A DNA stretch of 63,212 bases, counting the filler, from Octopus bimaculoides (Eukaryota), in NCBI RefSeq assembly GCF_001194135.2. It is 5 parts of 5 records of this genome, joined end to end, with 100 filler letters (N's around TTAATTAATTAA, not from the genome) between each part and the next. Parts side by side here need not be neighbours in the genome. Positions count along the whole stretch, not along the records: positions 1 to 18,566 come from NC_068994.1; 4 more parts are not named here. One strand, 5' to 3'. This document shows positions 1-18,566 of the stretch, in pieces (the stretch's first letter is position 1; every line of letters begins with the position of its first letter). The notes under the pieces were generated by a model. That model had not been told where the DNA came from and ran no database searches. It saw nothing but the letters and a program-made list of their open reading frames with translations. A program made the position numbers and the translations under genes.

Positions 1-703
1 ATTCTTTAAGTATTTCCCCGTAGCTGACGTGTTGCATCGAGATGATTTCCTTAGTGTAGCTTCGTTGGATTGCTTCAAGTTCCTCCATGGATTTTATATT
101 GCGTGGTGGCCATAGTTGGGAGCAATAGCCTAAGCGGCTGAGAACGTATGTTCTCCAAAGGATCATCAATGTCTCCTTTTCTCTTGCTTTGAAAGTTAGG
201 AGGATACATCCAGCCAGCCGTCTGCATTTTATTACCAAATTGGTAATAAGCACTTGGAAAGATGCATCATGGCTCATGTCAATGTCCAGGTCACGCACTG
301 ATTTTGATCCAGGGATTTCAATTCCTCCTGGGCGAGTGTATCCTGTCTGCATGTCGTTTAGTTTTGTGTGCTGGTAGCGTAGGGCCTGGAATTTCTACTT
401 TAAACTGCATGTTGTTGTCCTCACCCCACCTGTATATTGCATCCTGCTCCCGTTACAGATGTACAATATTTCCAGGATTTTGTATTGTCTGAGAGACTTT
501 TGTGTCATCTGCATAGCTAGCAAGGGTGGCTATCTGAGCAGCCGAGGCATGTCTGAGAGGGCCACTGTGAACAGCAGTGGCCCCAAGACAGTGCTCTGTG
601 GAATACCACTTGCTATTTGCGTTTTCTTGGAGGTTACTCCATTGGCCACTACTGCCTGACGTCTATCCTTTAGAAAGTTGTGCAGCCATTCTCCAAATTT
701 TCC
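1..703 (-). mobile_element. Decayed non-LTR retrotransposon reverse transcriptase, CR1/L2-type (partial, frameshifted)
   Basis: The minus strand translates to GIPQSTVLGPLLFTVALSDM, SYADDTKV (YADD at 504-515), YRWGEDNNMQF, VRDLDIDMS and ILWRTYVLSRLGYCSQLWPP...LEAIQRSYTK, the RT core and C-terminal motifs of CR1/L2-clade LINEs. There is one frameshift near 390. Confidence 0.9.
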
Positions 704-782
704 GCATATATATATATATGTGTGTGTGCATGTATATATATATACATATATGCGCGCGCGTGTATGTGTGTGTGTGTTTAAA

Positions 783-846
783 GGTGCATGGCTCAGTGGT
801 TAGAGCATCGAGATTACGATCGTGAGGTTTTGAGTTCGAATCCCGA
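783..846 (+). mobile_element. tRNA-derived SINE head (family C, my label), truncated
   Basis: A-box TGGCTCAGTGG and B-box GTTCGAATCC with no acceptor stem. The same head occurs in reverse at 63138 and 60063. Confidence 0.6.
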
Positions 847-849
847 GTT

Positions 850-2034
850 TTGCACAGAAAATGTGGAACATGTTAACATCGAGTTTCAGAAAAATTATTT
901 GTGACTTAAATAATCATTTTCTCAAAGATTTTCAGATCTTGACAGAATTGAGAATGAAATTCTTTTGCTTGAGAATCCCTTTGGCTGTAATCTTGATAAC
1001 ATGCCAACTGAACTACAACTGGAGCTTATTGACTTGCAAGCTAATACCTTGTTGAAAGAGAAGCACAGAGAATAAAACCTCATTGAATTTTATCGCTGCT
1101 TGCCTGCTGATGAGTTTTCAAAATTGAAAAAATTGCCTCAGGTATGGCATCAGTTTTTGGAACAACTTATGTTTATGAGCAAACCTTTTTCAAAAATGAA
1201 GTGTGTGAAGTTAATACATCGAACAAGGCACATTGATGAAAGCAATTTTTATGGTTGGCTGCAGCAATCATAAAGCAAACGTTTCCACAGAGTGGTTGTT
1301 GATGTGTAATGCAGTGTATAAAGCAAAACGCTAGCTTCACAAATCTCATTAACTTTTGTGCTGCTTACTTTTTATGCGTAGGAGTGGCTGTGTGGTAAGT
1401 AGCTTGCTTACGAGCCACATGGTTCCGGGTTCCCACTGTGTGGCACCTTGGGCAAGTGTCTTCTACTATAGCCTCGGGCCGACCAAAGCCTTGTGAGTGG
1501 ATTTGGTAGACGGAAACTGAAAGAGGTCCGTCGTGTATATGTATATATGTATGTGTGTGTATATGTTTGTGTGTCTGTGTTTGCCCCCCCCCCTTCCAAC
1601 ATCGCTTGAAAAACCGATGCTGGTGTGTTTACGTCCCCGTAACTTAGCGGTTCGGCAAAAGAGACCGATAGAATAAGTACTAGGCTTCCAAAGAATAAGT
1701 CCTGGGGTCGATTTGCTCGACTAGAGGCGGTGCTCCATTATGGCCACAGTCAAATGACTGAAACAAGTAAAGAGAATATGCAATTCAGCTATGTGTGCAC
1801 TTTTTCTAAAAATTCTAACTTGGTAATATTTTGGTATTATTAAAATGTGTTTATTGTTTTTATTTTTTGTGTGTATTTTATGTATTGATAAATAAATAGG
1901 ATGACTGTCTATTTTTTGTGTACATTCAGTGTATTCTATATTGTCCTGAATTGAACAAAATATTCATCCGGCCCGCGCTTGGCATTCTTTAAGTTATATC
2001 TGGTCCACTATGAAAAAAGTTTGGTGACCCCCTG
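850..2034 (+). mobile_element. hAT (Buster/SPIN/Charlie-type) DNA transposon 3' remnant with right TIR, interrupted by a SINE
   Basis: Positions ~930-1250 translate to FSDLDRIENEILLLENPF...ELQLELIDLQANTLLKEKHRE*NLIEFYRCLP...SVFGTTYVYEQTF, the hAT dimerisation region, with a stop and frameshifts. The end AAAAAGTTTGGTGACCCCCTG at 2034 matches the reverse of a CAGGGG-type TIR. The next 8 nt, ATCTACGT, have a central TA as expected for the target site. Confidence 0.8.
1376..1775 (+). mobile_element. SINE family A (my label), full length
   Basis: Head GGAGTGGCTGTGTGGTAAG...GGAAACTGAAAGA, an internal TA/TG microsatellite, and tail ...GGCCACAGTCAAATGACTGAAACAAGTAAA. It recurs more than 15 times in the window. 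Confidence 0.85.
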
Positions 2035-3159
2035 ATCTACGTAAAAACGCATATTTATGAAGTTTAGGAAAATCCTAGCAACAATGGAACAAACATTTAA
2101 ACTCAATGGGGGATTATACTTCATAATTAATATTTCCTTTCTTATTTTTGCATTTATGAATATTAGCATTGTTCTCTATGTAATGTAGTCATTGTTTGAA
2201 ACCACTGTTTTTATTGTGTTATTATAACAATGAGCAGAATGATTAAAGGAATCTTTTACTAGATGATAAACTGAATATGCCCTAAATACTCGAATCTAAA
2301 ATATTTTTACGATCATTAGCTGTCTCATTTTTCTGGATTTATAGATCTAAAGTTGAAGTTGTCAAGAAACACTTTTAAAACTAACGTACGGTTTACGTAG
2401 CGCTAAGATTTCTACTCTATCTTCTATTTTTAGCCTGGTAGCTATTCTTATTATGTCTAAATTAATAGCGTGTTAAATAGTAAAGTTGATTCTCCTACAG
2501 ATATTGATGATATTGTTGAAACAGGGTTGCCAATTTAGTGCTTTTTTTTTTTTAACTATTTTCAGAGCAAAAATTCATTGTGTTATGAGCCTGCGTAATT
2601 TTAGTGCTTTTTTTTTATAATTCAATGCTTTTTCATTAAAGTGAAATCAGAATTTCATTTGGAATTTTCAGTTCAAAAGTAGTGGGGGAGCATCACAGCC
2701 ATGTGTTGAGAGGAATTCTTTGGGGGTTGAATAATTCACCTCTGGAAACATGGTTGTTTTGTTCATCATTCTTAAACAACTCCTATTCGGGGACCTTTTA
2801 AGCGGAATGGGCTACTCAACTTGAAGAAAATTGTAATTGGGCCCCACCTGCAAGATCATGCGCTGTTTTTATATAAGATCACTATGTCGCGCACATATGG
2901 TCGTGATGCATGTGCCCGGTGTACCCTTATCAGACGGGTAGTCAAGATGGGTATATTGGGCTTCGTATATTTGTACCCCGTGCCACTTTGATGGCATGTA
3001 TTGCTCTCTCACTCAATTAGAAAAAGATAACGCGTAAACAACTGATTGGGATAAACAATAAAAGCTATAAAATATAACTATCGCAATCAATTTGAGATCA
3101 TTGTAAGGCGGCAGAATATACAACATTCTTGCTATAAATTATTTATATAGACTTTTGAA

Positions 3160-3325
3160 GGCGTCGAGTTGGCAGAATCGTTAGTACACAGGACGAAATG
3201 CCGCTAAGCATTTCGTCCACCCTTATGTTTTGGGTTCAAATTCAGCCGAAGTCGACTCTGCCTTTCATTGATAAAATATGTACAAATGAAACACTATGGT
3301 CGATTAAAATTGCTGACCTCGTTCC
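3160..3325 (+). mobile_element. SINE family B (my label), diverged
   Basis: GGCAGAATCGTTAG...GAAATGC...GTTCAAATT...GTCGACT..GCCTTTCAT, shared with the copies at 18168 and 21490. Confidence 0.65.
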
Positions 3326-3740
3326 AAACTTATAATGAATTATTTGTATAGATATTTTAATGTTTATTTGAAAAAATTAAGAACTAACGATTGACACAGG
3401 TTTCAGACAGTTTTATTCTGAATTGAAGTATAACTGTATAAAGATTCGACTGGCTAAAATTCATTTGAATATTTGTCTAAGTTAGTTTTAACACTTTTCA
3501 TTTTACCATATACGTATTTCGATGCAGAGAGAATATTTAGCAACATGAATTTTATAAAAATCAAATGAGCATAACCGATTGTGCATAGAAACTCTATGAG
3601 AAATTTTGAACATCAAATATGGACTTAAACGAAGTGCTAAATGCTGCTACCTAGCGAACTGTTACAGAAAATTGGATCCATAGATGCTTATATAAATCAT
3701 GTAAAACTATATCTTCTACCCTGAACTGAAAACATTCAAA

Positions 3741-3925
3741 CTAGTCTTGTGGAACCCACTTCATGATGATGTAAGAGGCAAACGTCGTCACACTTACATC
3801 GAGAACTTGATTGTAGACACTGGCCTGTAATGTATCCAGGACATCGAGGCAGTGATGCTGTTCCAAGGAGTGTGGCGGATAGACCTTGTTGCAGTGGCCC
3901 GGGTTGGAACCCGGCCATAATAATA
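3741..3925 (+). mobile_element. RTE-clade LINE 3' end fragment
   Basis: Translates to LVLWNPLHDDVRGKRRHTYIENLIVDTGL*...VMLFQGVWR, resembling the RTE C-terminus LWEP.HG.R.RGRP..TY.D.L..DTG. It is followed by a short (TAA)n tail. Confidence 0.6.
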
Positions 3926-4270
3926 AAATTACAACAAACGAAATTGATCGAGAAATCTTCGAAAATATAACGGGGTAAAAACAAAAGTAATTAAGTTAAT
4001 TTGATTGTAATTTATCCAGAATTGAAATTTTTAATATAAATCTTTTGATAGTTACACCTTTTTATGTGGTTTTTTGCTTAGGAGTTCTTTTGTCTTGTTT
4101 TGTTTGTTTGTTTGTTTGTTTTTTATTTGGGTTTTTTTTTGTACTTTTTACTTTTAGTGCCTTTTAGCTATCGATTTTTCTTCTTTTTTGTTACTTATGA
4201 TTTGACAATCGTGTATTGAGATGGTGTTCATGTTATGTGCAACAAACAGTTTTGTACGTATTTTTAATCT

Positions 4271-4642
4271 TTTCTTTTACTTGTTTCAGATTGGGGCCAT
4301 GCTGGGGCATCGCCTCGAGGAATTTTTTAGTCGAATGTATCGATTCCATTGCTTATCATTTTTTTTAAAGACTGGTACTTATTTTATTGTCGAACCGCTA
4401 TGTTACGGGGACGTAAACACACCAGCACCCGTTGTCATGCGATGAAGGGAGACAAACACAGACACAAAGACACACACATATATATACAACGGGCTTCTTT
4501 CAGTTTCCGTCTACCAAATCCACTCACAAGGCTTTGGCCGGCCTGAGGCTACAGTTGAAGATACTTGTCCAAGGTATCACGCAATGGGACTGAACCCTGA
4601 ACCATGTGACTGGGAAGCAAAATTTTTACCGCACAGAGACGC
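4271..4642 (-). mobile_element. SINE family A, full length, reverse
   Basis: Reverse complement of the 1376-1775 element, including both head and tail. Confidence 0.8.
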
Positions 4643-5519
4643 TTATGGCTTAATATTTGGATATTTACATTTTTGTCAAATCTTTGTATAAGTCATTAAA
4701 GTTGATGGTCAGTTTTCTCGTAGTGAGAAAATCAAATTCAAAGAGTTCGAGAGCTTCTGGCTAAGGAAGTAATTATGACATCTGAAGTCGATTATTTTCT
4801 TTGGTAGAATTAGTATTCCTTTGAATCAGATAAATGTCTTCTATCTCATTCACTAGTTTAGATTTTGGAACATATGAATTAGACAATCTATTACTGCTTG
4901 GGTGATATCACGACAAACTTCGCAGAAAATTTCAGAGGCTGTGTTACAAAAAGGTTTCTTTCAGTCCAGAGGTTTTATGAGATACCTTAGTAGAAAACTG
5001 CAACAAATAAGGACACGTGTGCTTTTTTTTATTATTATTATTTTTAATGCTGGTACGCTGAAGTTGAACATTTTAGTAGAATAAAAAGATTGATTCCCGG
5101 ACACTGTGTTTCATTACGACAGTTTATTAGGCTAAACACAACAATAATAATTCCTCAGTTTTCACTACTGAACATTAAGAACTTTAGTTGTTGTTATTGT
5201 GATGGTGGAAAAGGTAAAGAATGGTAGGAAAGGAGAAGCAGATAAGAGGGAAGGAAAGGGACAAAGATGAGGAAGTTGTGACAAGTGTAAGTTGAGATGG
5301 GAGCAGTCAAAGACAGGGGAAGGAGGAACAAGAGAAACACCGAAAAATAGATACAGACGTATTATCATACACGTGCACGCATTCATACACACATACATAC
5401 AATACATACATACACACATGCATACATACATACATACGTACATACATTCATACATACATACATACATACATACATACATGCACACATACATACATAAAAA
5501 TCATCATTTCGGTACAACT

Positions 5520-5860
5520 ATAACAAACCTAATATTGTTCTGTGGAACAGAGAACAAAAGTCATGCATTGTTGAAGAGTTCAACTGCCAAGCGGCATGAA
5601 TATACAATCAAAAACCCGGGAAAAAGAGAACGTTTATGGCGAATTAGTGCGGAACTTACAGCTCTTCTACTCTGACTATGAATTCTCATTTGTACCTATC
5701 ATCGGGTGCATTATGTTATGTACCAACGAATTTGCACAAAAGCCTTATAATACTCGGTTTCGCGAAGAAAGAGCAAAAGAAACTGACGCAGATTCTTCAA
5801 ATCCAATCCATTAGTGGCACAGTGATGATTTGTAAGTCGTTCCAAAAATCCTTCATGTGA
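5520..5860 (+). mobile_element. RLE-type (R4/Dong/NeSL-like) LINE endonuclease 3' remnant
   Basis: Joined frames read NKPNIVLWNREQKSCIVEEF...EKENVYGELVRNLQLFYSDYEFSFVPII.GALCYVP...LQIQSISGTVMICKSF, the PD-(D/E)xK restriction-like endonuclease tail. It is homologous to 60778-61092. Confidence 0.75.
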
Positions 5861-7517
5861 GATTCTTATGTGAACACACTTGGGTGTATGCATACACAAT
5901 TCAACCAACATGCCAACTCAACCGCGTATTTCCAGACACTGGAAACTTTCCTAATTCAAAAAGTCTTGGCCTTTTGTTAGCGACCGGCTTGAAATCTTTC
6001 AAGAAGAACTTAAATTAAACTTAAAGAAAAATCATACATTGCTATACTTTCACTGTGTCCACTCCTATCTGAAGTAGACATGACTATTATCAGACACAAA
6101 ATCCCAACCAGATCTATACTCCGCATTACAGAACTCTGTTGTCCTTGTGACTTTGAGGAGATAATCCATGGATATAAAGTCACTTAATCTAATGTGTTAC
6201 ATATAATCAGTACAGACCATTGAAAATGGTTGATCCAGTGTATTTATTGTCTGACTTGTAGACGTCATAGGTTGTTCTTAGGGTCTACAGTTGTGTTACA
6301 GTAATGCCGAAATGCATTGCCTGTTCGAGGAGATTATAAGTTTAATTGACCCCCGCTGAACATCCTAGTATACAGTTTTTGATGTATTTGTTGACTAGGA
6401 ACCCTGCAACATTTATAAGACTGTCCCTTTCCACTAGAGAACAGGCCTTTCTTCGATGTTTTGCCTTTGGTTTCACAAGCCCTGATGATGTAACGGTTAC
6501 CTCTTTCCATCTAAAGTAAGAGATTTGAATCTTCCTTAAAAAAACAACTTTTGTATATGTATGTGTATGTGTGTGTGTGTGTGTGTGCGTGCGTGCGTGC
6601 GCGCAAGTGCTCGTGCGTATCTTATTCACAACAAAGCAAAATCAAAAGAACTAACCTAAGTTTAAATATTACAAAGCCTTATTGTGGGTTAAATAAGAAT
6701 GTAAGCACGTTCTTTCTGTGCTACTGACGTGCGGGAAAAGAGGAAGGGGTCTCCTGACAGACCGTTTTACAATCTGTTTACCACTATTCAGAGAAGACGT
6801 ACCTAGCTTCATTCTCTAAACAACTTCAGAAATATATTAATATTTGAAGCTATTTGTGGTTAGCTTAGTAATGGATTTGCTTATTTGTGATTTTTATGAG
6901 TCACATTAATTTAACAATATATATTTTGTGCAAAACACAGGATAGTTAAGAATTGCAATGAATTTGTGCGTATGTGTAAGTATGTTTAAAAACTAACGCT
7001 TGAGAGAAAGGCAAAGCGGGTTTGTGCGGGCATGCATATTTTCGTGTGTGTATATATGTGTGAGCGTGTATGCATGTATAACCTGTATACTTGGTGTATA
7101 TATACGCTATACAAGATCATTGACACGCACACATGCATACATACATATAGTCATATATATATACACATACATATGTACATAGATTTATGCATATTTGCAG
7201 ACATGCAGACATATATGCATGCATACATATATGCAGACATGCATACATATATGCATGCATACATAGATGTGTATATACATACATGAATACATATGTGTGT
7301 ACGTACACAGATGTATACATAATGATGTGGGTGTATGTATACATACATACATACATACAAAACAATACAAAAATGAAAGCCCAAGCCATGTCATGGAAGC
7401 CGAAATTTCGGTAATGTACTCAACGACGGCAGGCGAAATTACGAGCCCTCTCAGATCGTATAGAAAGCGTTGAAGAAGGGTCACAGGACTTGCACGAGGG
7501 CAGACTACTACTACTAC

Positions 7518-7520
<3 letters not shown>

Positions 7521-7606
<86 letters not shown>
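7521..7606. repeat. (TA)n microsatellite
   Basis: Uninterrupted TA dinucleotide run, one of many TA, CA, GA, TACA and TATC arrays in the window. Confidence 0.95.
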
Positions 7607-7610
<4 letters not shown>

Positions 7611-7715
7611 CATGCATGTATGTATGTATGTATACACACTTGAATACAATATAATTTATAAAGTACATTGTGCAATGAGTTACTAGATACGTTTAGAAAA
7701 TTGACGGATGCAAGT

Positions 7716-10700
7716 CTAGCGTAGCGTCCTGTTAGAACACAAACTAGAAAGATTACTGTAGAAAGTCTTCATGTCTGCATAGAGTTGAGGAAGGTCTACT
7801 ACAAAGATGAAGATAGGAAGTGCAGATAGGAGTATCACAGCAAAAACTCCGATACCTTGAGCCGATCGTCGTTCGTCCGGTGCACTGGTTTTGGCTCGAA
7901 TTGTCTTAGAGAGTTTCTTTTTATCTACGGCAAGCTCTTTTTTTAAGCTAGCTTTAAGAATTTCCAACTCCTTCTTGGTGGCTGGCTGCTGTGTCACATC
8001 TTCACAAATACAAGGACACATAGGCACAGTGGGCGTCACTAAAGTGGCCTGCGTTACTGTAGTGGTTTGTATTATGTCACTGGTTCCTATTGTGGAACTG
8101 GTTCCTATTTTGTCACTGGTTCCCAATGTTGAACTGGTTTCTGTTGTGTCAGTGGTACTTATTGTGGTACTGGACTCTATTGTGTATCTGGTTTCTGTTG
8201 TGGAACTGGTTTCTGTTGTGTCACTGGCTCCTATTGTGGAACTGGTTTCTGTTGAGGAAGTGGCTTCTGTTGTGTTACTGGTTCCTATTGTGTCACCGGT
8301 TCTTATTGTGGAACTGGTTCCTATTGAGGAACTGGTTTCTGTTGTGGAAGCGGTTCCTATCGTGGAACTGGTTTCTGTTATGCCACTGGTTCCTATTATG
8401 GAACTAGTTTCTGTTGTGTCAGTGCTTCCAGTTGTGGAACTGGTTCCTACAGTGGAACTAGTTCCTATTGTGTCAGTAGTTCCAGTTGTGGAACTGGTCC
8501 CTATTGTGGAGCTGGTTTCTATTGTGGAACTGGGTTCTTTTGTGGAACTGGTTTCTGTTGTTGAACTGGGTTCTGTTGTGGAACTGGTTCCTATTGTGAA
8601 ACTGGTCTCTGTTGTATCAGTAGTACCTATTGTGGAACTGGTTCCTATTGTGTCACTGGTTCCTATTGTGTCATTGGTTCCTATTGTGAATCTGGTTTCT
8701 GTTGTGTCAGTGGTACCTGTTGTGTCACTGGTTCCTATTGTGGAACTGGTTCCTAGCGAGGAATTGCTTCTTATTGTGGGACTGGTTTCTATTGTGTCAG
8801 TGGTTCTTATTGTGGAAATGGTTTGTCTTGTGGAGCTGGCTTCTGTTCTGTCACTGGTTCCTATTGTAACACTGGTTCCTATTGTAACACTGGTTCCTAT
8901 TATGGAATTGGTTTCTGTTGATCCCCTGGTTCCTANNNNNNNNNNNNNNNNNNNNNNNNNNNNNNNNNNNNNNNNNNNNNNNNNNNNNNNNNNNNNNNNN
9001 NNNNNNNNNNNNNNNNNNNNNNNNNNNNNNNNNNNNNNNNNNNNNNNNNNNNNNNNNNNNNNNNNNNNNNNNNNNNNNNNNNNNGTTGTAGAACTGGTCC
9101 CTACTGTGGAGCTAGTTTCTATTGTGGAACTGGGTTCGGTTGTGGAACTGGTTTCTGTTGTGGAACTAGTTCCTGCTATAGAACTGGCGTCTGTTCTGTC
9201 ACTGGTTCCTAATGTGGAACTGATTTCTGTTGTATCAGTAGTACCTATTGTGGAACTGGTTCCTACTGTGTCACTGGTTCTTATTGTGGAACTGGTTTCT
9301 GTTGTATCGGTGGTTCCTATGGTGGAACTGGTTTCTATTGTGGAACTGGTGACTGTTGAGGAAGTCGCTTCTGTTGTGGCACCGATTCCTATTGTGTCAC
9401 CGGTTCCTATTGTGGAACCTGTTCCTATTGTGGAACTGGTTCCTATTGTGGAACTGGTTCCTATTGTGGAACTGGTTCCTATTGAGGAACTGGTTTCTGT
9501 TGTGGAACTGGTTTCTGTTATGTCACTGGTTCCTATTGAGGAACTAGTTCCTATTGTGTCAGTAGTTCCAGTTGTGGAACTGGTCCCTATTGTGGAGCTG
9601 GTTTCTATTGTGGAACTGGGTTCTTTTGTGGAACTGGTTTCTGTTGTTGAACTGGGTTCTGTTGTGGAACTGGGTTCTGTTGTGGAACTGGTTCCTATTG
9701 TGAAACTGGTTTCTGTTGTATCAGTAGTACCTATTGTGGAACTGGTTCCTATTGTGTCACTGGTTCCTATTGTGTCACTGGTTCCTATTGTGAATCTGGT
9801 TTCTGTTGTGTCACTGGTACCTGTTGTGTCACTGGTTCCTATTGTAGAACTGGTTCCTAGTGAGGAATTGCTTCTTATTGTGGGACTGGTTTCTATTGTG
9901 TCAGTGGTTCTTATTGTGGAAATGGTTTGTCTTGTGGAGCTGGCTTCTGTTCTGTCACTGGTTCCTATTGTAACACTGGTTCCTATTATGGAATTGGTTT
10001 TTGTTGATCCCCTGGTTCCTATCGTGGAACTGGTTCCTATCGTGGAACTGGTTCCTATTGTGGGACTAGTTCCAATTGTGGAACTAGCTCCAATTATGGA
10101 ACTAGTTCCACTTGTGGGACTGGTTTCAGTTGTGGAACTGGTTCCTATTGTGGAACTGGCTTCTGTTATGTCACTGGTTCCTATTGAGGAACTGGTTTCT
10201 GTTGTGTCAGTGCTTCCAGTTGTAGNNNNNNNNNNNNNNNNNNNNNNNNNNNNNNNNNNNNNNNNNNNNNNNNNNNNNNNNNNNNNNNNNNNNNNNNNNN
10301 NNNNNNNNNNNNNNNNNNNNNNNNNNNNNNNNNNNNNNNNNNNNNNNNNNNNNNNNNNNNNNNNNNNNNNNNNNNNNNNNNNNNNNNNNNNNNNNNNNNN
10401 NNNNNNNNNNNNNNNNNNNNNNNNNNNNNNNNNNNNNNNNNNNNNNNNNNNNNNNNNGAACTGGGTTCGGTTGTGGAACTGGTTTCTGTTGTGGAACTGG
10501 TTTCTGTTGTGGAACTGGTTCCTGCTATAGAACTGGCGTCTGTTCTGTCACTGGTTCCTATTGTGGAACTGATTTCTGTTGTATCAGTAGTACCTATTGT
10601 GGAACTGGTTCCTACTGCGTCACTGGTTCTTATTGTGGAACTGGTTTCTGTTGTATCGGTGGTTCCTATGGTGGAACTGGTTTCTATTGTGGAACTGGTG

Positions 10701-11358
10701 ACTGTTGAGGAAGACGCTTCTGTTGTGTCAATGGTTCCTACTGTGTCACCGGTTCCTATTGTGGAACTGGTTCCTATTGTGGAACTGGTTTCTGTTTTGT
10801 CAGTGGTTCTTATTTTGGAACCGGCTCCTATTGTCTCACTGGTTTCTGTTGTGGAAGCGGTCCCTATTGTGGAACTGGTTTCTGTTATGTCACTGGTTCC
10901 TATTGAGGAACTAGTTTCTGTTGTGTCAGTGCTTCCAGTTGTGGAACTGGTTCCTACAGTGGAACTAGTTCCTATTGTGCCAGTAGTTCCAGTTGTGGAA
11001 CNNNNNNNNNNTCCTATTGTGCCAGTAGTTCCAGTTGTGGAACTGGTCCCTATTGTGGAGCTGGTTTCTATTGTGGAACTGGGTTCTTTTGTGGAACTGG
11101 TTTCTGCTGTGGAACTGGTTTCTGCTGTGGAACTGGTTCCTGTTATAGAACTGGCATCTGTTCTGTCACTGGTTCCTATTGTGGAACTGGTTTCTGTTGT
11201 GTCAGCGGTACCTGTTGTGGAACTGGTTCCTATTGTGGAACTGGTATTTATTATTTCACTGGTTCCAGTTAAATCACCAGAATGAGTCACACCATCATCA
11301 GTAACAACGGATGGTACTCTACTTGTGAGAAAGGTTGATTTAGGAATGTGAAATGGCC
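7716..11358 (-). CDS. Terminal exon of a type I membrane mucin-like protein: Thr/Ser hexapeptide stalk, CPCxC, charged helix, TM helix, short tail
   Basis: Acceptor TTTTCTTCATTTGTAG|GG at 11358 (phase 1). The minus frame is stop-free through all sequenced repeat DNA (TIGTSS/TTETSS units) and ends ...MCPCICEDVT...KKELAVDKKKLSKTIRAKTSAPDERRSAQGIGVFAVILLSALPIFIFVVD...NRTLR*. TM helix at 7797-7856, TAG at 7716-7718. Three N gaps lie inside the repeat. Confidence 0.85.
8090..11255. repeat. Coding minisatellite, 18-bp unit (GGAACTGGTTCCTATTGT and variants) with ~1.1-1.4 kb higher-order period
   Basis: Read directly. The same ordered block of unit variants recurs near 8460, 9548 and 11013. Confidence 0.9.
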
Positions 11359-12408
11359 CTACAAATGAAGAAAACACACAGTCTTAGTCATACAAACAGC
11401 TTAAAATTGAAGCACAGAACATGAAAATATATGACTAGTTTACTTAACCTGAACTCATATGTATGCATGTATGTATGTATGTATAAATTGATATCGATAG
11501 ATAGATAGAGACACAAAAATATACACAAAAACAACAAGCAAGATGACGGAGTGTTATGCAGTGTAAGTGTTCGGTGGTAATTCGTCCATTCTCTAGAAAC
11601 AGACAGCAAGAAGTTCTGATTGCCTTTAGAAATGCAGATCCTAGATGTTCTATTGTTATGTTAGTTATCGATTTGCATAAGTCAATAATGTGGTATATCT
11701 CCATTAAACATAGATTGCAGTGCTTGGAATAATACTGAATAGAAGTAGTTAGTGTCACGATGAACTACGTAACGTCAGTAGCAGTGAAATAAATTTGGAT
11801 ATTAGAAATACTAGCTGTGAGAGAATTATATAATTGTAAACATATGCAAATATGCAAATTGAACTTTCCACTGCTGCGGTAGCCTAACTTATACCTTCTT
11901 TAAATAATAACTGAATATTCTGTACTGTTCTCTGGGGAAGGAAACCGTGTAATGTCTTTAAGCAGCCACCAACAAACTGAGAGATCGTCCATCAGGTGAC
12001 TCTTCTTGTTTTTTTTTGGGGGGGGTCTTTGTTTTTATTCTCTTTTTTGTTTTTTTTTCATGTATCTATGTTTACATTCTTTTCATTTCTCTCACAGCTA
12101 GACGTTCTACTATTTAAATACATTTCACTTGTTCATCCCTTCCAATTTACGCTGTCGTGTGCGTAAAATTTGAATGCATGTGTGCGTGCGTGTGCAGGAG
12201 TGATTTTACATGTGTGTGTGTTTGTATACACACACACTTATATATATATAGAGAGAGAGAGAGACAGAGAAACAGAGAGAGGGAGAGAGAGAGAGAGAGA
12301 GGGAGAGAGAGAGAGTGAGTGAGAGAGAGAGAGTGAGAGAGAGAGAGTGAGAGAGAGAGAGAGAGAGAGATAAACATATGTACGGACATATACAACTGTC
12401 ACATATAC

Positions 12409-12442
<34 letters not shown>

Positions 12443-12737
12443 CACAGAAAGCAGATATCTTGCAGGTGGAAATTATTAGACAGGGAAAACACTTCTAATG
12501 TTAGTTGATAGACAATCTATCACTCAGTTTTACATCTCCACTTGGTCCTTGGATTACCTCAGTGGGCGCCAGTGTTTTGCTAGCATTCTGTCCAAGTCTC
12601 TGATTTTTAGAATAACGTCGTCTGTCCCCAGTGAACAGTCATTAAGACCCTTAACATTATCATAAGCATTACTAACTTTTCTTGTGAAGTCATTAAGAAA
12701 AGCAAGTATATATATTCACATAAAATTAACCATTTAC

Positions 12738-12971
12738 ATGTTATGGGTGTTGTTAGGTCAATATAGTTTCCATCAGTGAGGAGGACTTTGGAGTTCCAGC
12801 AGTCAGTCATGATAAGTAACTGACACTGTCCATTCTTATATGAATAACCACAGCAGTTGAAAGTCGAAGAACAAACTTCTTCACAATATCACACCAAAGA
12901 GCGGAAGGTAATGTTCGGATATTTTACACTGGCATTGATTATTTGGTAAACATTGCTTTTCTCCTGAGTTC
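12738..12971 (-). CDS. PAN/Apple-like Cys module exon 2 of the mucin gene, containing an in-frame TGA
   Basis: Acceptor TCTTTATTGCAG|GA and donor ACAT|GTAAAT; 234 nt, phase 1 at both ends and in frame with both neighbours. It reads TQEKSNVYQIINASVKYPNITFRSLV*YCEEVCSSTFNCCGYSYKNGQCQLL...DLTTPIT, with C-x3-C-x5-C...YSY-x4-C spacing. TGA at 12889-12891. Confidence 0.65.
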
Positions 12972-15148
12972 CTGCAATAAAGATTTGTATACAGAGTAAG
13001 GATCATCAGACAGAAAGGAAAGGCAGGAATGAGAAAAAGAAAGGAAAAGAAGAAAGAAAGAAAGAACAAGAAATAAAATATAAGAAAGAGAAGACAACAG
13101 GGAAAGAAAATGAAAAAGAGAGGAAGAGAAAAGAAATGAAGAAAAGAAGAAAGGAGAAAAGAAAGAGATCGAAAAAAGAAAAAGAAATATATTACACGAC
13201 TTAAATTCCCAAAGACTGGTGAAGGCTGAGAAGTACTTCAGCCCAGATTGTTTACTCACCAATTGCAAACCCGCAGTGGAGAGTGAGATCCATATTTAGA
13301 ATACTGCTGCTACTATACACAAAAACATCAAAAATTACATCCATCCAACTGCAAAACTCGTTACAACCTTTGACCCACTGAGACTCTATCTTCTATCTTC
13401 ACCTTTTCTATGGATACCGCCTTGACTGCTGCTCTTCTAAACAAATTAATGACATTCCAGGAGCCCATCTCACACACTCGTCTCCCTTCCTCACCCCACC
13501 TCTACTATGTTTCACTTTTCTTAGCAACCTCATTAAACATTTTACCTGATTCTTTATCTCTATGACCATCGAGCCTATGGAATTCTCTTCCTACTCATTT
13601 TCTTCAGATAGGATCAGCGTTACACAATGTGTGACAAGGCTGCCTTTGAATTTCCTCTACAGTCCATCTGACGTGTTTTCACATAGATTTCAACCAAACA
13701 GTTTTACTCATAAGTCAGTTGCTCGAGATGTTGCTCAGATGGAACCCAAATGTAGGCGGACTTTTTAAACATTCAGCTTTTACTTTCATAAAGGCAAGAC
13801 GCGAACAACCATCCTCCCAATTCAATATCCTCTACACCATTAAATCATCATCTGCATTCTCAACATAATTTTAAGTATCAATTATAATATATATCAGTTC
13901 AAGAGACTGAATACCTCCCAAAAAAACGAGATGATCACAATGAATATTCTTAATTCAATTTCAGATGTAAAAATATCACTCTGTAAACATGAAAAGTACA
14001 GTGTTAATAGAGATATTCAGTGGCGAAATATATGACTGTTGATTTACTAAGAGATTTACAAAAACTTCTACACTATAAGAATTCTTCAACATCAATTGGA
14101 AAATCGATTGCAATCGTAAAGAAACTGCTACGAATATTGCAGGGGAGGTAAAGTAGAATATTTTAACGCCAGAAAGCAAACGGTTGATTTGGGACTGTTT
14201 CGAGGTTCTTTGAAGGAGCGTCCCTATGTAGCGCATCCAGCTATAGAATTACTCTACAAATTACACTGTTCCATCTGAAATAAAGAACATTTTAGGCATC
14301 GTAGTGTCTCATTTAATACAAGAAGACGAATTGGTCATGGCTGGAAGATCTTTGGCCATAGGTCTGCAGGATCAGAGTTAAAGGATCTGTAATTGTCTCA
14401 ACTACTGACGGCCAGCCCACCATCCATTACTCTGTGCCATCGTCCCGTGTCTATTCTAAAGGAATTCATTTTAAATTCATATGTTGTCACAAGTCCCTTA
14501 AATTGATACGCGTCGACAACTAATCTATATTGTCACATGCATTTGTCGTTATTCCTGTTACCTACTTGAAACCTATCGCAAATTACAAAAAAAAATTTGA
14601 TTTCTTGCAAAATAATACAAAGCCTTATATTATGTTGTTTAGCCGTCACTCTGATTAAACTGACTTGTGACTAAAGGTGTTCCAATTGTAACCATCCAGT
14701 TCTCTATTCTAGGAATACATTCTCCAATGTGTCCTAAGTTGTTTTGAAAGAGATTTGACCGCTGTACTAGCAGATCATTAACGCAACTTTGGTTCGAGGA
14801 GGAAGGAATGTCACATGTCTCTCTCCCTCAGGAAAAAGCTAAGGGAATTTGCTTCGACTGGGAATTAAAACTGAACTGCAGTCTCGACAGACCAACAACT
14901 TAACTTTTTCTCTACAACGTTCACGCTATTCCAGCCTCTCTTTAAAAGGGGAATATTTTGATATTCATATGCTTCCCAATGTACGAGTGACAAAGGTGAA
15001 GTGAAAAATAACTTTAATACAACTTGAAATTTGAGTCGTGTCTCGACTCATCAACAGCTTACTAACAGCTACTCTTCCTCACTTGTAAACCTGGAACATT
15101 TTAATCAGTTAATAAAGAACCATATACATAAATACGCTATTTACTTAC

Positions 15149-15402
15149 TGTTTTGATCTTGAAGAATCATCAGTACTGTCGAAGTATCATGTGTTTCTGG
15201 TAATGTAGAATGCAATGTATTATTACACTCTTTAGAATCCAATATACTGCATAAATTATCAAACAGTTGGAAGTATAAGCAGTCACAATGGACACTATAA
15301 ATGCATCTCAATGCACATTTAGGTAAACAACTTTGTTTACAATTGCTGAAGTACTTTCGTGCAGTAAAGTGTTTATTTAGAACTATTTCATACATTCTGC
15401 CC
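15149..15402 (-). CDS. PAN/Apple-like Cys module exon 1 of the mucin gene
   Basis: Acceptor TTGTTTTTGTTTTTATAG| and perfect donor AACA|GTAAGT (phase 2 to phase 1). It reads GRMYEIVLNKHF...SCLPKCALRCIYSVHCDCLYFQLFDNLCSIL...QDQN, with the same C-x3-C-x5-C spacing as the next exon. Confidence 0.7.
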
Positions 15403-15429
15403 CCTATAAAAACAAAAACAAAATTGTAT

Positions 15430-15622
15430 TAATATTGGTTTCAAATTTTGGCACAAACCCAATAGTTTCGGGGGAAAAGAGGAAGTCGGTTACATTGACC
15501 CACAGTATTCAACGGGTTCTTATTTTATCGACACCAAAAGGGATAAAAGACAAAGTCAACCTCAGAACGTAAAGAACGTAAAGCATTTCGCCCAGAGTGC
15601 CAGCGATTTTGCTGCTTGCCAC
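15430..15622 (-). mobile_element. SINE family B, reverse, intronic
   Basis: AAATTTTGGCACAA...TACATTGACCC.CAGT...AAAGTCAACCTC...GCATTTCGCCC, the reverse of family B. Confidence 0.6.
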
Positions 15623-16254
15623 TTTAAAATGGTATTGATTTGTTTTAACTTAAGTTACTAGAGAACTTTTTCTATTTATCTTTATTTATCTATTTATAAG
15701 TCACTTGTGAAAAACTATCAATTACATGTAATCCAGTATAACTTGTGTTGTCAAATCGTTGTCGACTAAACAAGCAAGCCCGTTTTAGTTGCTTTGTGAA
15801 GAGTGTGAATTTTGACATCCTACACGATTAAAAACATGGCCCGTCAAAATGCGGATGAAATCAAGTGAGTCAATGTCCATCCAATAATGTATATATAGGC
15901 ATGTTAGCAATCTGTGTATGTTTAGAGGCATGTTCACATTTCATTCAAATGATGCGAGGAATAAATAGATAATCTTCATCTCAACATCTTCGAATTTGGC
16001 GGCAACAGGTCAATGGGTGTAACTGACTCAGGTAGCAACTTAACATTATGTCGGGCAAACAGTTGTACTTTGACCTGAACACACACTATGTTTGAAGGTG
16101 TTGTGAGAACTAATGGTTTCACTAGCCATTTTGGCAAGCTTCTGCATTCTACAAGTTCATTTGTCTTGACTTGTCATTGGACATATTGCATAAGAACTAA
16201 AAAGTGAGATTGACGTGTGTGCAGCTGTTTTTCACTATAAAGATAAGCTTGCGT

Positions 16255-16295
<41 letters not shown>

Positions 16296-16525
16296 CTGGG
16301 TCATTTATTACATTTGAATATCGAAATATTAAATAGCAGCAACATGTTACTCTACCAAAAGTTATTCCTGTTGTGTAAAAAACCTGGGAAGGTTTCATTT
16401 AATAATGTAGTGCTAGATATTCCTAAAAAGATGGGGTGATCATGGCTAATTTGGTTTTGTATTCACGTCTGCTGTAAAATCTGTAATATGGCAGCCATAC
16501 TGTTGTAGTGAAACTAACACCTCGA

Positions 16526-16742
16526 TCGCCATTACATACAAAACTACCTCCCGCCATTAGATACAAACTACTATCGCCATTACATACAATCTTCTCATTT
16601 AAATATAAATAAACGCGAGCGTAGTAGAGAACCCATTCCTTGTCATCACGTGACTGATTATTATTCGAATCGGCAACTTCTTCGAACCGTTCCCGCCAGA
16701 ACGCAAACTGACCAATCACAGCCCTTAATAAGGTCACGTGAT
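16526..16742. promoter_or_regulatory. Candidate promoter: two TCACGTGA E-boxes, CCAAT box, E2F-like site, triple CGCCAT repeat
   Basis: TCACGTGA at 16646 and 16734, GACCAATCAC at 16710, TTCCCGCCA at 16690, and a 24-bp unit x2.7 at 16526-16589. The patch is locally CpG-rich and lies ~1.1 kb upstream of the first identified mucin exon. Confidence 0.4.
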
Positions 16743-18167
16743 AGCGTTTTTCTATCNNNNNNNNNNNNNNNNNNNNNNNNNNNNNNNNNNNNNNNNNNNN
16801 NNNNNNNNNNNNNNNNNNNNNNNNNNNNNNNNNNNNNNNNNNNNNNNNNNNNNNNNNNNNNNNNNNNNNNNNNNNNNNNNNNNNNNNNNNNNNNNNNNNN
16901 NNNNNNNNNNNNNNNNNNNNNNNNNNNNNNNNNNNNNNNNNNNNNNNNNNNNNNNNNNNNNNNNNNNNNNNNNNNNNNNNNNNNNNNNNNNNNNNNNNNN
17001 NNNNNNNNNNNNNNNNNNNNNNNNNNNNNNNNNNNNNNNNNNNNNNNNNNNNNNNNNNNNNNNNNNNNNNNNNNNNNNNNNNNNNNNNNNNNNNNNNNNN
17101 NNNNNNNNNNNNNNNNNNNNNNNNNNNNNNNNNNNNNNNNNNNNNNNNNNNNNNNNNNNNNNNNNNNNNNNNNNNNNNNNNNNNNNNNNNNNNNNNNNNN
17201 NNNNNNNNNNNNNNCACATACAGATTCATATTATTGTGTACCCACGAACTGGTATAATTGTTCACGTGTTATTGACTCTCTTTCTATTTGCTGTAATATT
17301 TCACATACACATACATGTATCACTCACATACACACTTTTCTTTGTATGACGGCCTGTCTTTGATTATGTTCTTATATGTCTCATTCACACTCTCACACAG
17401 ACATACATCTTTAACGCTACAATAAATATTTCTGTTATTCATCTTATACGGTTGTGGTCTTTCATTGCTGGTCATCTATGTTATCGTCGTATAACATATA
17501 TTATGTATATCATCATTGATATATATAATTTTGTGTTTGACCGTGTGACACGTTTAAATAAAAGGAGTCCTCTGTTTTTCCATTCGTCACCATTTCTCCT
17601 TTTTGAGTCCGCACGGTCGTACCTTACACTGTAAAGAAAGTAATGTTTTATTTTATAAGTTTATAGCATAGGTATCCAACTTACATTTAATTACTATTTT
17701 GGTCTTAATTTTCAAATGAGTTCTTCCTTCAGATTTTTAGAGATTTTGCTAGTGTGCGATGTCTTTGCCAACGCAGCTGTATAGCGTCAAACTACTTTAT
17801 ATCACAACTGAACAACAGCATTGTTGTTCACTGCATTACTGACGGCGAGAGTGATATGGGAATGTCTATAATTCAATGCAGAACAAATATTTAGAAGGAC
17901 ATCGTTCATAAAGAATCGCTTTTTCCCCCCTTCTATCACCGATATTTGTATCCCTCACCTTTATACGCACAGCTATGGTTTGGGATGCGATTGAGTCAGA
18001 AACCAGGTAGTGGTGTACCTCTGAAGAATCATGATAATGGTATATTAGAAAATATAAAATTATTATTACTGCATATATGTATTCAATAGCTACAATGGCA
18101 TTCCACCTGTACAACGCATGCAATAAATATAACACAAATGATCTTATCATTAGTTTGCTTTCCTTCT

Positions 18168-18388
18168 AAGGCGGTGAGCAAGCAGAATCGTTAGCATATC
18201 GGACAAAATGCTAAGCGGCTTTTCTTCTGGCTTTACGTTCTGACTTCAAATTGTACCGAAGTCGACTTAGCCTTTTACCCTTCAAGTCAATAAAATAAGT
18301 ACTAGTTGAATACTGGAGTTGATGTAATTGACTAGCCCACTCCTTCAAAACTTCAGGCTTTGTGCCTATAGGAAAAAGAATTATTATT
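18168..18388 (+). mobile_element. SINE family B
   Basis: AAGGCGGTGAGC..GCAGAATCGTTAGC...GTCGACTTAGCCTTT...TGTGCCTATAG..AAAGAATTATTATT. Confidence 0.7.
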
Positions 18389-18566
18389 AGAGTGATTCCA
18401 TAAGGTAAGTGTATGACTTCGTAAAAGTTTCTTAATTTTTAAGATAAAAAAAAAAGGGAGAAAAAAATGGACTTACATTCAGAAACGGCATCTATGGGAA
18501 TCTGTATAAAGAGAATTAAATATCTTTATGGATGTGTGTGCGTATGTATGTATACATTATATAAAT

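What the first reader, a model, noticed from the sequence alone, without database searches (positions are those of the whole stretch)
12738..12971. In-frame TGA in an otherwise intact, symmetric PAN-like cassette exon
Seen: strong splice sites, 234 nt, phase 1-1, Cys spacing conserved with the upstream module, and a single TGA (12889-12891) two codons before the first Cys. Skipping the exon leaves the rest of the protein in frame. Known: coleoids recode mRNA extensively by A-to-I editing and UGA to UIG-type changes read as Trp, but ADARs disfavour a 5' G, which this A has. The context UGA-UAU is not the UGA-CUAG readthrough motif. Inferred options: an editing-rescued stop, a poison or secreted-isoform switch (one-PAN soluble form versus membrane form), a dead cassette that is skipped, a null allele, or a consensus error. 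A weaker phase-1 acceptor (GTGAAG| near 12880) would also bypass the stop.
Basis: partly seen in the sequence, partly recalled or inferred. Interest (0 to 1): 0.72.

Follow-up and report, generated by a model that had tools for sequence, protein, structure and literature searches.

The report
Young stop codon in octopus exon
A real protein-coding exon of a badly annotated octopus membrane-mucin gene has recently gained a stop codon in place of a conserved tryptophan and also lost a key splice-site base, so it most likely marks an exon or gene copy being lost, not an RNA-editing trick.

Summary
On the minus strand, 12971..12738 is a 234-nt phase 1-1 exon with one in-frame TGA (12891..12889).

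It is a genuine exon. The Octopus vulgaris orthologue is intact and reads TGG (Trp). Four of five other family copies read TGG and one reads AGG.

- module 1: 15403..15149
- module 2: the finding
- last exon: 11358..7716, about 3.6 kb, holding a Ser/Thr-rich 18-nt-repeat mucin stalk, a transmembrane helix and a short tail

Skipping module 2 stays in frame (A|GG = Arg).

The TGA is derived (G to A). So is a second G-to-A change, at donor position +5: GTAAAT here against GTAAG in five relatives, with a non-G at -1.

The rest of the gene looks alive. The tail has dN/dS 0.16, and the stalk frame is open wherever it was sequenced.

Nothing supports editing rescue. The A has a 5' G, the fold z-scores are -0.3 and -0.5, no complementary arm covers the site, and Rfam finds no SECIS.

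Best reading: a young nonsense lesion in an exon that is skipped, or a null allele. This is ordinary.

"PAN-like" is plausible but below threshold. Reads and RNA-seq were not available, so an assembly error or heterozygosity cannot be excluded.

The parts
12738..12971 (-). Module-2 exon. 234 nt, phase 1-1, a Cys-rich PAN/Apple-like module that carries the in-frame TGA.
   Evidence: Sequence and translation. The O. vulgaris orthologue is 93% identical and intact. Family tblastn reaches E to 4e-28.
12889..12891 (-). In-frame TGA, written tca on the + strand. It replaces a family-conserved Trp codon (TGG), so it is a derived G-to-A change at codon position 3. It lies 151 nt upstream of the exon's 3' end.
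   Evidence: The DNA alignment of six module-2 exons shows TGG in four, AGG in one and TGA only here. Polarised as window-derived. Protein alignments agree.
12732..12737 (-). 5' splice site of the module-2 exon, ACAT|gtaaat. The +5 base is A, where all five relatives have G (gtaagt or gtaagc). The -1 base is T.
   Evidence: Alignment, sequence.
12972..12992 (-). 3' splice site of the module-2 exon (ctttattgcag|). It is conserved in the relatives.
15149..15403 (-). Module-1 exon. 255 nt, phase 1-1, eight Cys, intact. Acceptor tttttatag|, donor AACA|gtaagt.
   Evidence: All Cys are conserved in O. vulgaris. Module-1-type modules get a sub-threshold PAN_1 match and weak PDB matches that include PAN/apple proteins.
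7716..11358 (-). Last coding exon. It starts at a strong acceptor (tgtgtgttttcttcatttgtag|GG). It then holds a Ser/Thr-rich mucin-like stalk, a juxtamembrane Cys motif (PMCPCICED, 8024..7998), the TM helix, a 24-aa tail and the TAG stop at 7718..7716.
   Evidence: tblastn of O. sinensis P0002 gives 75% identity over 129 aa. The frame is open in every sequenced segment. Acceptor, coordinates. The O. vulgaris counterpart is one uninterrupted ORF of about 1020 aa.
8063..11277 (-). Tandem array with an 18-nt (6-codon) period that encodes the S/T-rich stalk. Three assembly gaps interrupt it (8936-9084, 10226-10457, 11002-11011) and break the frame artificially.
   Evidence: TRF, translations, N runs.
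7791..7856 (-). Predicted transmembrane helix GIGVFAVILLSALPIFIFVVDL.
   Evidence: It is conserved in the O. sinensis and O. bimaculoides paralogues. The region from PMC... to the stop has dN/dS 0.16 against O. vulgaris.

Best explanation
The TGA is a real, evolutionarily young nonsense substitution. A TGG Trp codon changed to TGA by a G-to-A transition in this lineage.

It sits in a genuine coding exon, the second Cys-rich PAN/Apple-like module of an octopus-specific, tandemly duplicated gene. That gene encodes a mucin-like type I membrane protein: module 1, module 2, a stalk of more than 1000 aa rich in Ser and Thr, a TM helix and a short tail.

The same exon has also lost the +5 G of its 5' splice site, in a donor that already lacks G at -1. 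That change is expected to lower inclusion of the exon.

Because the exon is phase 1-1, skipping it yields an in-frame, membrane-anchored protein with one module. Including it yields a stop 151 nt before the last junction. The product would then be truncated and the transcript possibly degraded.

So this is an exon, or an allele or gene copy, at an early stage of being lost from a fast-evolving family. No recoding is involved.

Shown: the exon is real, the stop is derived, the donor change is derived, skipping stays in frame, and the rest of the gene is intact. Inferred: that the exon is actually skipped, and that the TGA is present in the animal rather than only in the assembly.
For: 1. The exon is real. 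The orthologous O. vulgaris exon is intact and sits inside an annotated protein, P0001. Paralogous module-2 exons are included in O. sinensis RefSeq proteins.
2. The stop is derived. TGG is found in O. vulgaris and in three O. sinensis paralogous exons, AGG in one O. bimaculoides paralogue, and TGA only here.
3. There is a second derived lesion. The donor is GTAAAT here and GTAAG(T/C) in all five relatives, with -1 = T throughout.
4. Of the twelve family module exons examined (six of each type), this one alone carries a stop.
5. The lesion is young. Only three unambiguous window-lineage changes fall in the exon, against seven on the O. vulgaris lineage. All Cys codons are kept.
6. The gene is otherwise alive.
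   - The module-1 reading frame is intact.
   - The mucin frame is open across 544, 1141 and about 1215 nt of sequenced repeat.
   - The juxtamembrane, TM and tail region has dN/dS 0.16 (4 nonsynonymous, 7 synonymous; binomial p = 0.005) and 95.9% nucleotide identity, against about 92% in introns.
7. Skipping is in frame, and the flanking sites are good: module-1 donor ACA|gtaagt and a long pyrimidine tract at the last-exon acceptor.
8. Module number varies naturally in the family, from one to four modules. A one-module product is therefore structurally plausible.
Against: - No reads or RNA-seq could be examined. Whether the A is real, fixed or heterozygous, and whether the exon is skipped, is untested.
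- Octopus donor-site requirements are assumed from general metazoan U1 pairing rules.
- The module exons evolve about as fast as the introns (6.8-7.8% against 5-6.7% mismatches). Their dN/dS of 0.45-0.68 is not significantly below 1 (p = 0.12-0.32). Constraint on the modules in this particular copy is therefore not shown.
- No signal-peptide or first exon was found in the window, or in 10 kb upstream in O. vulgaris. The full gene model is incomplete.
- No protein from this locus exists in the protein collections for the window's own genome.
Confidence: 0.62

Rival explanations
1. Assembly or consensus error, or a heterozygous variant picked as the consensus. The animal, or its other haplotype, actually carries TGG and the exon is normal.
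For: The window comes from a gap-rich draft-style assembly, with N runs of 149, 232, 10 and 458 nt. A single base separates TGA from the conserved TGG. The rest of the exon and the gene are intact, which is what an error or a rare allele would look like.
Against: The exon lies 1.7 kb from the nearest gap, in unique sequence. The closest paralogues seen are only about 75% identical, so a collapse of copies is unlikely. A second derived G-to-A change, at donor +5, lies 156 nt away in the same exon unit. That would need a second error or a linked variant.
Confidence: 0.15
2. Restorative A-to-I editing. ADAR converts UGA to UGI, which is read as UGG (Trp). The ancestral residue is restored, and this let the G-to-A substitution be tolerated ('harm-permitting' editing).
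For: The ancestral codon is TGG, so editing of this A would be exactly restorative. The harm-permitting model for coleoids predicts tolerated G-to-A substitutions at edited sites (PMC6881472). In the minimum-free-energy fold the A pairs with U in a local imperfect helix of about 15 bp. Premature stops corrected by editing are documented in fungi (PMC10776026).
Against: - The A has a 5' G, the neighbour ADARs disfavour most (established ADAR preference).
- The exon fold is no better than shuffles: z = -0.34, and -0.50 with 100-nt flanks.
- No inverted-repeat arm within about 1.5 kb covers 12860-12920.
- O. vulgaris has a disrupting change in the local helix.
- Typical restorative editing levels in coleoids are low, with a median under 2.5%. 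That would not rescue a stop.
- Expression in neural tissue is unknown.
Confidence: 0.05
3. Regulated isoform switch or poison exon. Inclusion deliberately yields a truncated, secreted one-module protein or an NMD target. Skipping yields the membrane form.
For: The architecture allows it. The stop lies 151 nt before the last junction, skipping stays in frame, and a long CU-rich tract lies 40-220 nt upstream of the acceptor.
Against: The stop is not conserved. The orthologue and four of the five other copies encode Trp. This is therefore not an evolved switch but at most an accidental by-product. The product would end 26 residues into a Cys-rich module.
Confidence: 0.08
4. The whole gene copy is already a pseudogene in this species. 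The TGA is just its first visible lesion, in a redundant tandem family.
For: There is no annotated protein from this locus in the collections. The module exons diverge at about the intron rate. No 5' exon was found. Paralogues that could compensate exist.
Against: The last exon of 3.6 kb keeps an open frame in all sequenced parts, and its tail shows purifying selection. There are no frameshifts or further stops in either module exon.
Confidence: 0.1

Closest known systems
PAN/Apple domain modules (Pfam PAN_1 PF00024; examples are Toxoplasma MIC4 apple domains and the Sarcocystis SML-2 lectin)
   Same: - The Cys core has the form C-x3-C-x5-C(C)-x-Y-x-Y-...-C-x-L-L-...-C.
- The modules sit on phase 1-1 exons, typical of shuffled extracellular modules.
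- Module-1-type sequences get sub-threshold PAN_1 matches (E = 0.006 and 0.02).
- The module-1 profile's weak PDB matches include MIC4 apple domains, a fungal Kelch-domain protein and saratin (E = 0.015-2.3). That the last two carry PAN-type modules is my recollection, not a tool result.
- The module-2 core aligns to PAN-positive repeats of a Physella lectin-like protein.
- UniRef names paralogue P0012 'Apple domain-containing protein'.
- The top Foldseek hit is the SML-2 lectin, a PAN/apple protein from my own knowledge.
   Different: - No module-2 sequence reaches any Pfam PAN threshold.
- The module-2 profile finds no PAN protein in the PDB.
- The AlphaFold models are low confidence (pLDDT 52) and the Foldseek match is not significant (E = 2.1).
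C. elegans LET-653-type PAN + mucin luminal matrix glycoproteins (PMC4970718, seen)
   Same: N-terminal PAN/Apple modules are followed by a long Ser/Thr-rich mucin-like region.
   Different: From my own recollection of that paper (only its title and abstract were seen here), LET-653 ends in a ZP domain and is secreted. The octopus protein ends in a TM helix and a short tail. No sequence homology beyond the module type was shown. The octopus family was found only in Octopus species.
Exon loss by a nonsense mutation plus 5' splice-site +5 G>A (classic exon-skipping lesions; unitary pseudo-exons)
   Same: A derived in-frame stop and a derived loss of +5 G, in a donor without G at -1. The exon is symmetric, so skipping preserves the frame.
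   Different: Skipping itself was not observed here. Splice-site dependencies are inferred from other metazoans.
Restorative ('harm-permitting') A-to-I editing in coleoids, and correction of premature stops by editing in Fusarium (PMC6881472, PMC10776026)
   Same: The genomic A descends from an ancestral G. Editing would restore the ancestral Trp.
   Different: There is no RNA evidence. The sequence context is disfavoured (5' G). No dsRNA partner was found. Rescue of a premature stop by ADAR editing did not come up for cephalopods in the literature searches run here.

Membership tests
PAN/Apple domain (Pfam PAN_1/2/3/4) | Profile-HMM match at or above the gathering score | tested here: not met
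   Module 2 from the window, from O. vulgaris and from four paralogues gives no PAN hit at E <= 10. Module-1-type sequences score PAN_1 at 16.8 and 15.2 bits, below the 21.4-bit cut-off.
PAN/Apple domain (Pfam PAN_1/2/3/4) | Conserved disulphide framework (core C-x3-C ... C ... C-x-L) within a module of about 70-80 aa | tested here: met
   The Cys columns are invariant in the alignments of six module-2 and eight module-1 sequences. Module 1 and module 2 align in register on these Cys (hhalign E = 0.041).
PAN/Apple domain (Pfam PAN_1/2/3/4) | Alpha/beta apple fold | tested here: inconclusive
   The AF2 models have pLDDT 52.0 and 52.5, with a beta-alpha-beta-beta-beta order of elements. The best Foldseek PDB hit is the SML-2 lectin 2yil_A, a PAN/apple protein from my own knowledge, but at E = 2.1 and probability 0.35.
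ADAR recoding site (A-to-I, UGA to UGG) | Target A embedded in a stable dsRNA with a complementary partner | tested here: not met
   The fold z-scores are -0.34 (exon) and -0.50 (exon with 100-nt flanks). No inverted-repeat arm covers the site in 11400-14400. Only a local imperfect helix of about 15 bp is predicted.
ADAR recoding site (A-to-I, UGA to UGG) | Favourable 5' neighbour (not G) | tested here: not met
   The context is U-G-A-U, so the 5' neighbour is G.
ADAR recoding site (A-to-I, UGA to UGG) | A in DNA and G in cDNA from the same individual | not testable with these tools
   No reads or transcriptomes are accessible. No transcript-derived protein covering this exon was found in the collections.
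Selenocysteine UGA | SECIS element in the 3' UTR, and Cys or Sec at the homologous position | tested here: not met
   Rfam at gathering thresholds gives 0 hits across 1-18566. The homologues have Trp or Arg there, not Cys.
Conserved poison / PTC cassette exon | The stop codon is conserved in orthologues | tested here: not met
   The O. vulgaris orthologue has TGG and an open exon.
Decaying pseudo-exon / pseudogene | Several disabling lesions and neutral evolution on the affected lineage | tested here: inconclusive
   There are two derived lesions (the stop and donor +5). There are no frameshifts, no excess of window-lineage changes (3 against 7), an intact Cys framework and a constrained tail.
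Mucin-like type I membrane protein | Long Ser/Thr-rich tandem-repeat region followed by one TM helix and a short tail; an N-terminal signal peptide | tested here: inconclusive
   The stalk and the TM helix are shown. In the O. vulgaris last exon the composition is 23% Ser and 28% Thr. No signal-peptide exon was found.

The most novel reading that the evidence does not exclude
The genomic UGA, and possibly also the donor +5 A, which is likewise an ancestral G, is converted back to a G-equivalent by ADAR editing of the pre-mRNA. A coleoid would then keep a 'broken' exon usable only where editing is high. That would be a restorative, harm-permitting rescue of a premature stop codon in an animal.
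Probability: 0.05. Interest if true: 0.75.

Novelty: new member of a known kind. Interest (0 to 1): 0.27.

Why it matters
As a stop codon, it matters little. A recent nonsense change in one copy of a fast-evolving tandem family is routine genome turnover.

Two by-products are useful.

1. The locus encodes a large octopus-specific membrane protein, made of PAN/Apple-like modules and a mucin stalk, that current annotations miss or break up. O. vulgaris has a 90-aa fragment plus a gene called on the strand opposite to the mucin reading frame. The O. sinensis and O. bimaculoides models all start at an internal Met.

2. The site is a clean, cheap test of whether coleoid editing ever rescues a premature stop. 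The ancestral state is known, the stop is a single base change, and three read-outs are enough: the DNA base, the RNA base and the junction counts.

Tried and rejected
- Pfam scans of the window exons, and of six module-2 sequences, gave no PAN hit.
- The module-2 profile against PDB sequences gave only noise.
- A single-sequence AF2 model and its Foldseek search were meaningless. The 6-row alignment model was no better in confidence.
- P0003, P0006 and P0007 from phmmer are repetitive, low-complexity look-alikes and not family members.
- I looked for a first or signal-peptide exon in three ways and found nothing convincing.
  - A crude PWM exon scan.
  - ATG-plus-hydrophobicity scans of 15404-18566 and of 10 kb upstream in O. 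vulgaris.
  - An alignment of a candidate block at 18165-17959 with the paralogues. The reading frame is not preserved there.
- Conservation between paralogues does not mark exons, because the introns align too at 70-80%.
- Selenocysteine and programmed readthrough were rejected. Rfam finds no SECIS, the homologues have Trp, and the context is UGA-U.
- The alternative acceptor at 12878 was rejected, because it has no pyrimidine tract and would delete the first Cys.
- A literature search for this octopus family found nothing.

Full report
**1. The observation**

The feature lies on the minus strand. Positions 12971..12738 form a 234-nt segment bounded by ttattgcag| and |gtaaat. In phase 1 it reads TQEKSNVYQIINASVKYPNITFRSLV*YCEEVCSSTFNCCGYSYKNGQCQLLIMTDCWNSKVLLTDGNYIDLTTPIT. 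The only stop is TGA at 12891..12889, in the context TGA-TAT.

The coordinates, length, phases and stop are all as described.

Two details are overstated.
- The donor ACAT|GTAAAT lacks G at both -1 and +5. By a crude weight-matrix score, both splice sites of this exon are mediocre.
- The two modules share a Cys pattern but are only marginally similar: BLASTP E = 2.1 and profile-profile E = 0.041.

**2. It is a real exon of a real gene family**

A word-indexed search found one relative, a 90-aa 'hypothetical predicted protein' of Octopus vulgaris (P0001). It covers this exon at 86% identity and has Trp where the window has the stop.

Its locus (L001) is collinear with the window in reverse, at about 92% nucleotide identity.

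An exhaustive phmmer search then found the family.
- O. sinensis LOC118765931, isoforms X1 and X2. Their layout is alternating module-1 and module-2 units, then a Ser/Thr stalk, a TM helix and a tail.
- O. bimaculoides A0A0L8FY39 (P0004).

A profile search added two more.
- O. bimaculoides LOC106880439 (P0012), named 'Apple domain-containing protein' by UniRef.
- O. sinensis LOC118765932 (P0011).

All real members are from Octopus.

**3. The whole gene in the window**

tblastn of the O. sinensis protein showed the rest of the gene on the minus strand. A strong acceptor at 11358 (tgtgtgttttcttcatttgtag|GG) opens the last exon.

That exon runs through an 18-nt tandem array at 8063-11277. Read on the minus strand, the array is a Ser/Thr-rich mucin-like stalk. 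It is followed by:
- a PMCPCICED motif
- a TM helix (7856..7791)
- a 24-aa tail
- TAG at 7718..7716

The stalk frame is open in every sequenced segment. Three N gaps shift it artificially. In O. vulgaris, whose assembly has no gaps here, the same exon is one ORF of about 1020 aa with 23% Ser and 28% Thr.

Module 2 joins the last exon as T|GG = Trp. Skipping module 2 joins module 1 as A|GG = Arg, in frame.

No first or signal-peptide exon was found.

**4. What happened at the stop**

I aligned the six available module-2 exons as DNA: the window, O. vulgaris, three from O. sinensis and one from O. bimaculoides. The codon is TGG in four, AGG in one, and TGA only in the window. The stop is therefore a derived G-to-A transition.

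The same alignment shows a second derived G-to-A change. Every relative has |GTAAG(T/C) and the window has |GTAAAT. The -1 base is T throughout. By general U1-pairing rules (established knowledge, not tested in octopus), losing +5 G in a donor without -1 G favours exon skipping.

Of the twelve family module exons examined (six of each type), only this one carries a stop.

**5. Age and constraint**

In module 2, three changes polarise unambiguously to the window lineage and seven to the O. vulgaris lineage. There is therefore no sign of long decay in the window.

| Region (window against O. vulgaris) | dN/dS | Substitutions | Binomial p |
|---|---|---|---|
| Module 2 | 0.45 | 9 nonsynonymous, 5 synonymous | 0.15 |
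| Module 1 | 0.68 | 15 nonsynonymous, 5 synonymous | 0.32 |
| Both modules | 0.57 | 24 nonsynonymous, 10 synonymous | 0.12 |
| PMC... to stop (juxtamembrane, TM, tail) | 0.16 | 4 nonsynonymous, 7 synonymous | 0.005 |

Neither module is significantly below 1. The exon divergence of 6.8-7.8% is at or above the intron mismatch rate of 5-6.7%. The tail region is 95.9% identical at the nucleotide level.

The gene as a whole has therefore been maintained, its modules evolve fast, and the stop is recent.

**6. Tests of the exotic options**

Editing:
- The A has a 5' G.
- The exon folds no better than shuffled sequence, with z = -0.34, and -0.50 with flanks.
- The A sits in a local imperfect helix of about 15 bp, and O. 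vulgaris has a disrupting change in it.
- No inverted-repeat arm in 11400-14400 covers the site.
- The one supporting point is that editing would be restorative, as in the harm-permitting model (PMC6881472). The levels reported there are mostly low.

Selenocysteine: Rfam finds nothing in the window, and the homologues have Trp.

Conserved poison exon: contradicted by the intact orthologue.

Alternative acceptor at 12878: it has no pyrimidine tract.

**7. Is it PAN/Apple?**

- Module 2 gets no Pfam or PDB-sequence support.
- Module-1-type sequences get sub-threshold PAN_1 matches.
- The module-1 profile gives weak PDB matches (E = 0.015-2.3) to a fungal Kelch-domain protein, Toxoplasma MIC4 apple domains and saratin. 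That the first and last of these carry PAN-type modules is my recollection, not a tool result.
- The module-2 core aligns to PAN-positive repeats of a Physella protein.
- The AF2 models are poor (pLDDT 52). Their best PDB match is the Sarcocystis SML-2 lectin, a PAN/apple protein from my own knowledge, and the match is not significant.

The verdict is PAN/Apple-like in framework, with membership not demonstrated for module 2.

**8. Source of the window**

Orthologous O. bimaculoides and O. sinensis segments differ by 8-10%. That matches the difference between the window and O. vulgaris. The O. bimaculoides assembly is also full of N runs, like the window. The window is therefore probably O. 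bimaculoides, or a species equally distant from O. vulgaris. This is an inference.

The fetched O. bimaculoides locus (L003) is a paralogue and not this locus.

**9. Conclusion**

The most likely account (about 0.6) is a genuine, young nonsense mutation. It is accompanied by a weakened donor, in a symmetric module exon of a fast-evolving, tandemly duplicated membrane-mucin gene. The exon is either skipped, leaving an in-frame one-module protein, or the allele is null.

| Alternative | Probability |
|---|---|
| Assembly error or heterozygous consensus | about 0.15 |
| Whole-copy pseudogene | about 0.10 |
| Accidental truncated or NMD isoform with some use | about 0.08 |
| Editing rescue | about 0.05 |

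Reads and RNA-seq would settle it in an afternoon. The finding is ordinary. The mis-annotated gene family is the more useful by-product.

Noticed in passing
L001 12463-15141 (O. vulgaris), which corresponds to window 8063-11277 + strand: The O. vulgaris annotation calls an 892-aa gene on the strand opposite to the mucin stalk. That frame is Cys/Gly-rich (GTGSYCGTGFCC...). The annotation leaves the real gene as a 90-aa fragment with a dubious 'WTDEF' terminal exon. In the window, two + strand frames stay open over stretches of the repeat. The Ser/Thr frame on the other strand continues into a TM helix and tail that are conserved in relatives.
   Followed up: partly
L002 10001-61774 (O. sinensis): Two family genes lie in tandem. 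Gene A is module 1, module 2, tail at about 9.9-20.1 kb. Gene B is module 1, module 2, module 1, module 2, tail at about 44.9-61.8 kb. RefSeq isoform X1 joins gene A's module-1 exon to gene B's exons across about 35 kb. All the octopus models start at an internal Met at the 3' end of a module-1 exon, so the true 5' ends are unknown.
   Followed up: partly
window 13010-13190 (a CU-rich tract on the minus strand): A pyrimidine-rich (CTT/CTTT) tract of about 180 nt lies 40-220 nt upstream of the module-2 acceptor, and it is conserved in O. vulgaris. Tracts like this can bind splicing repressors of cassette exons. This is untested.
   Followed up: no
window 2-799, minus strand: Open frames here carry a motif that looks like reverse transcriptase (…GIPQSTVLGPLLF…), which suggests a non-LTR retroelement fragment. 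Pfam gave no hit at E <= 0.01, so the call rests on my own recognition of the motif.
   Followed up: partly
window 1377-1779 and 4387-4642: Two copies of an interspersed repeat in opposite orientation. Both match L001 2763-3163, at 81% and 75% identity.
   Followed up: no
window 8936-9084, 10226-10457, 11002-11011, 16757-17214: Assembly gaps. Three lie inside the coding mucin array, so its true length and frame continuity are unknown. One lies upstream of module 1, where a 5' exon could be hidden.
   Followed up: no
L003 14758-14994 (O. bimaculoides LOC106880439): This paralogue has Arg (AGG) at the Trp position and Thr instead of Tyr or Phe before the first Cys. It also has CY instead of CC in the core, so the Trp is not strictly invariant in the family.
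   Followed up: partly
L004 (Logan SRR11869385 contig, 1041 nt): This contig holds a further module-1-like exon (P0013) from an unidentified sequencing run. The ORF reads through into what looks like intron sequence.
   Followed up: no
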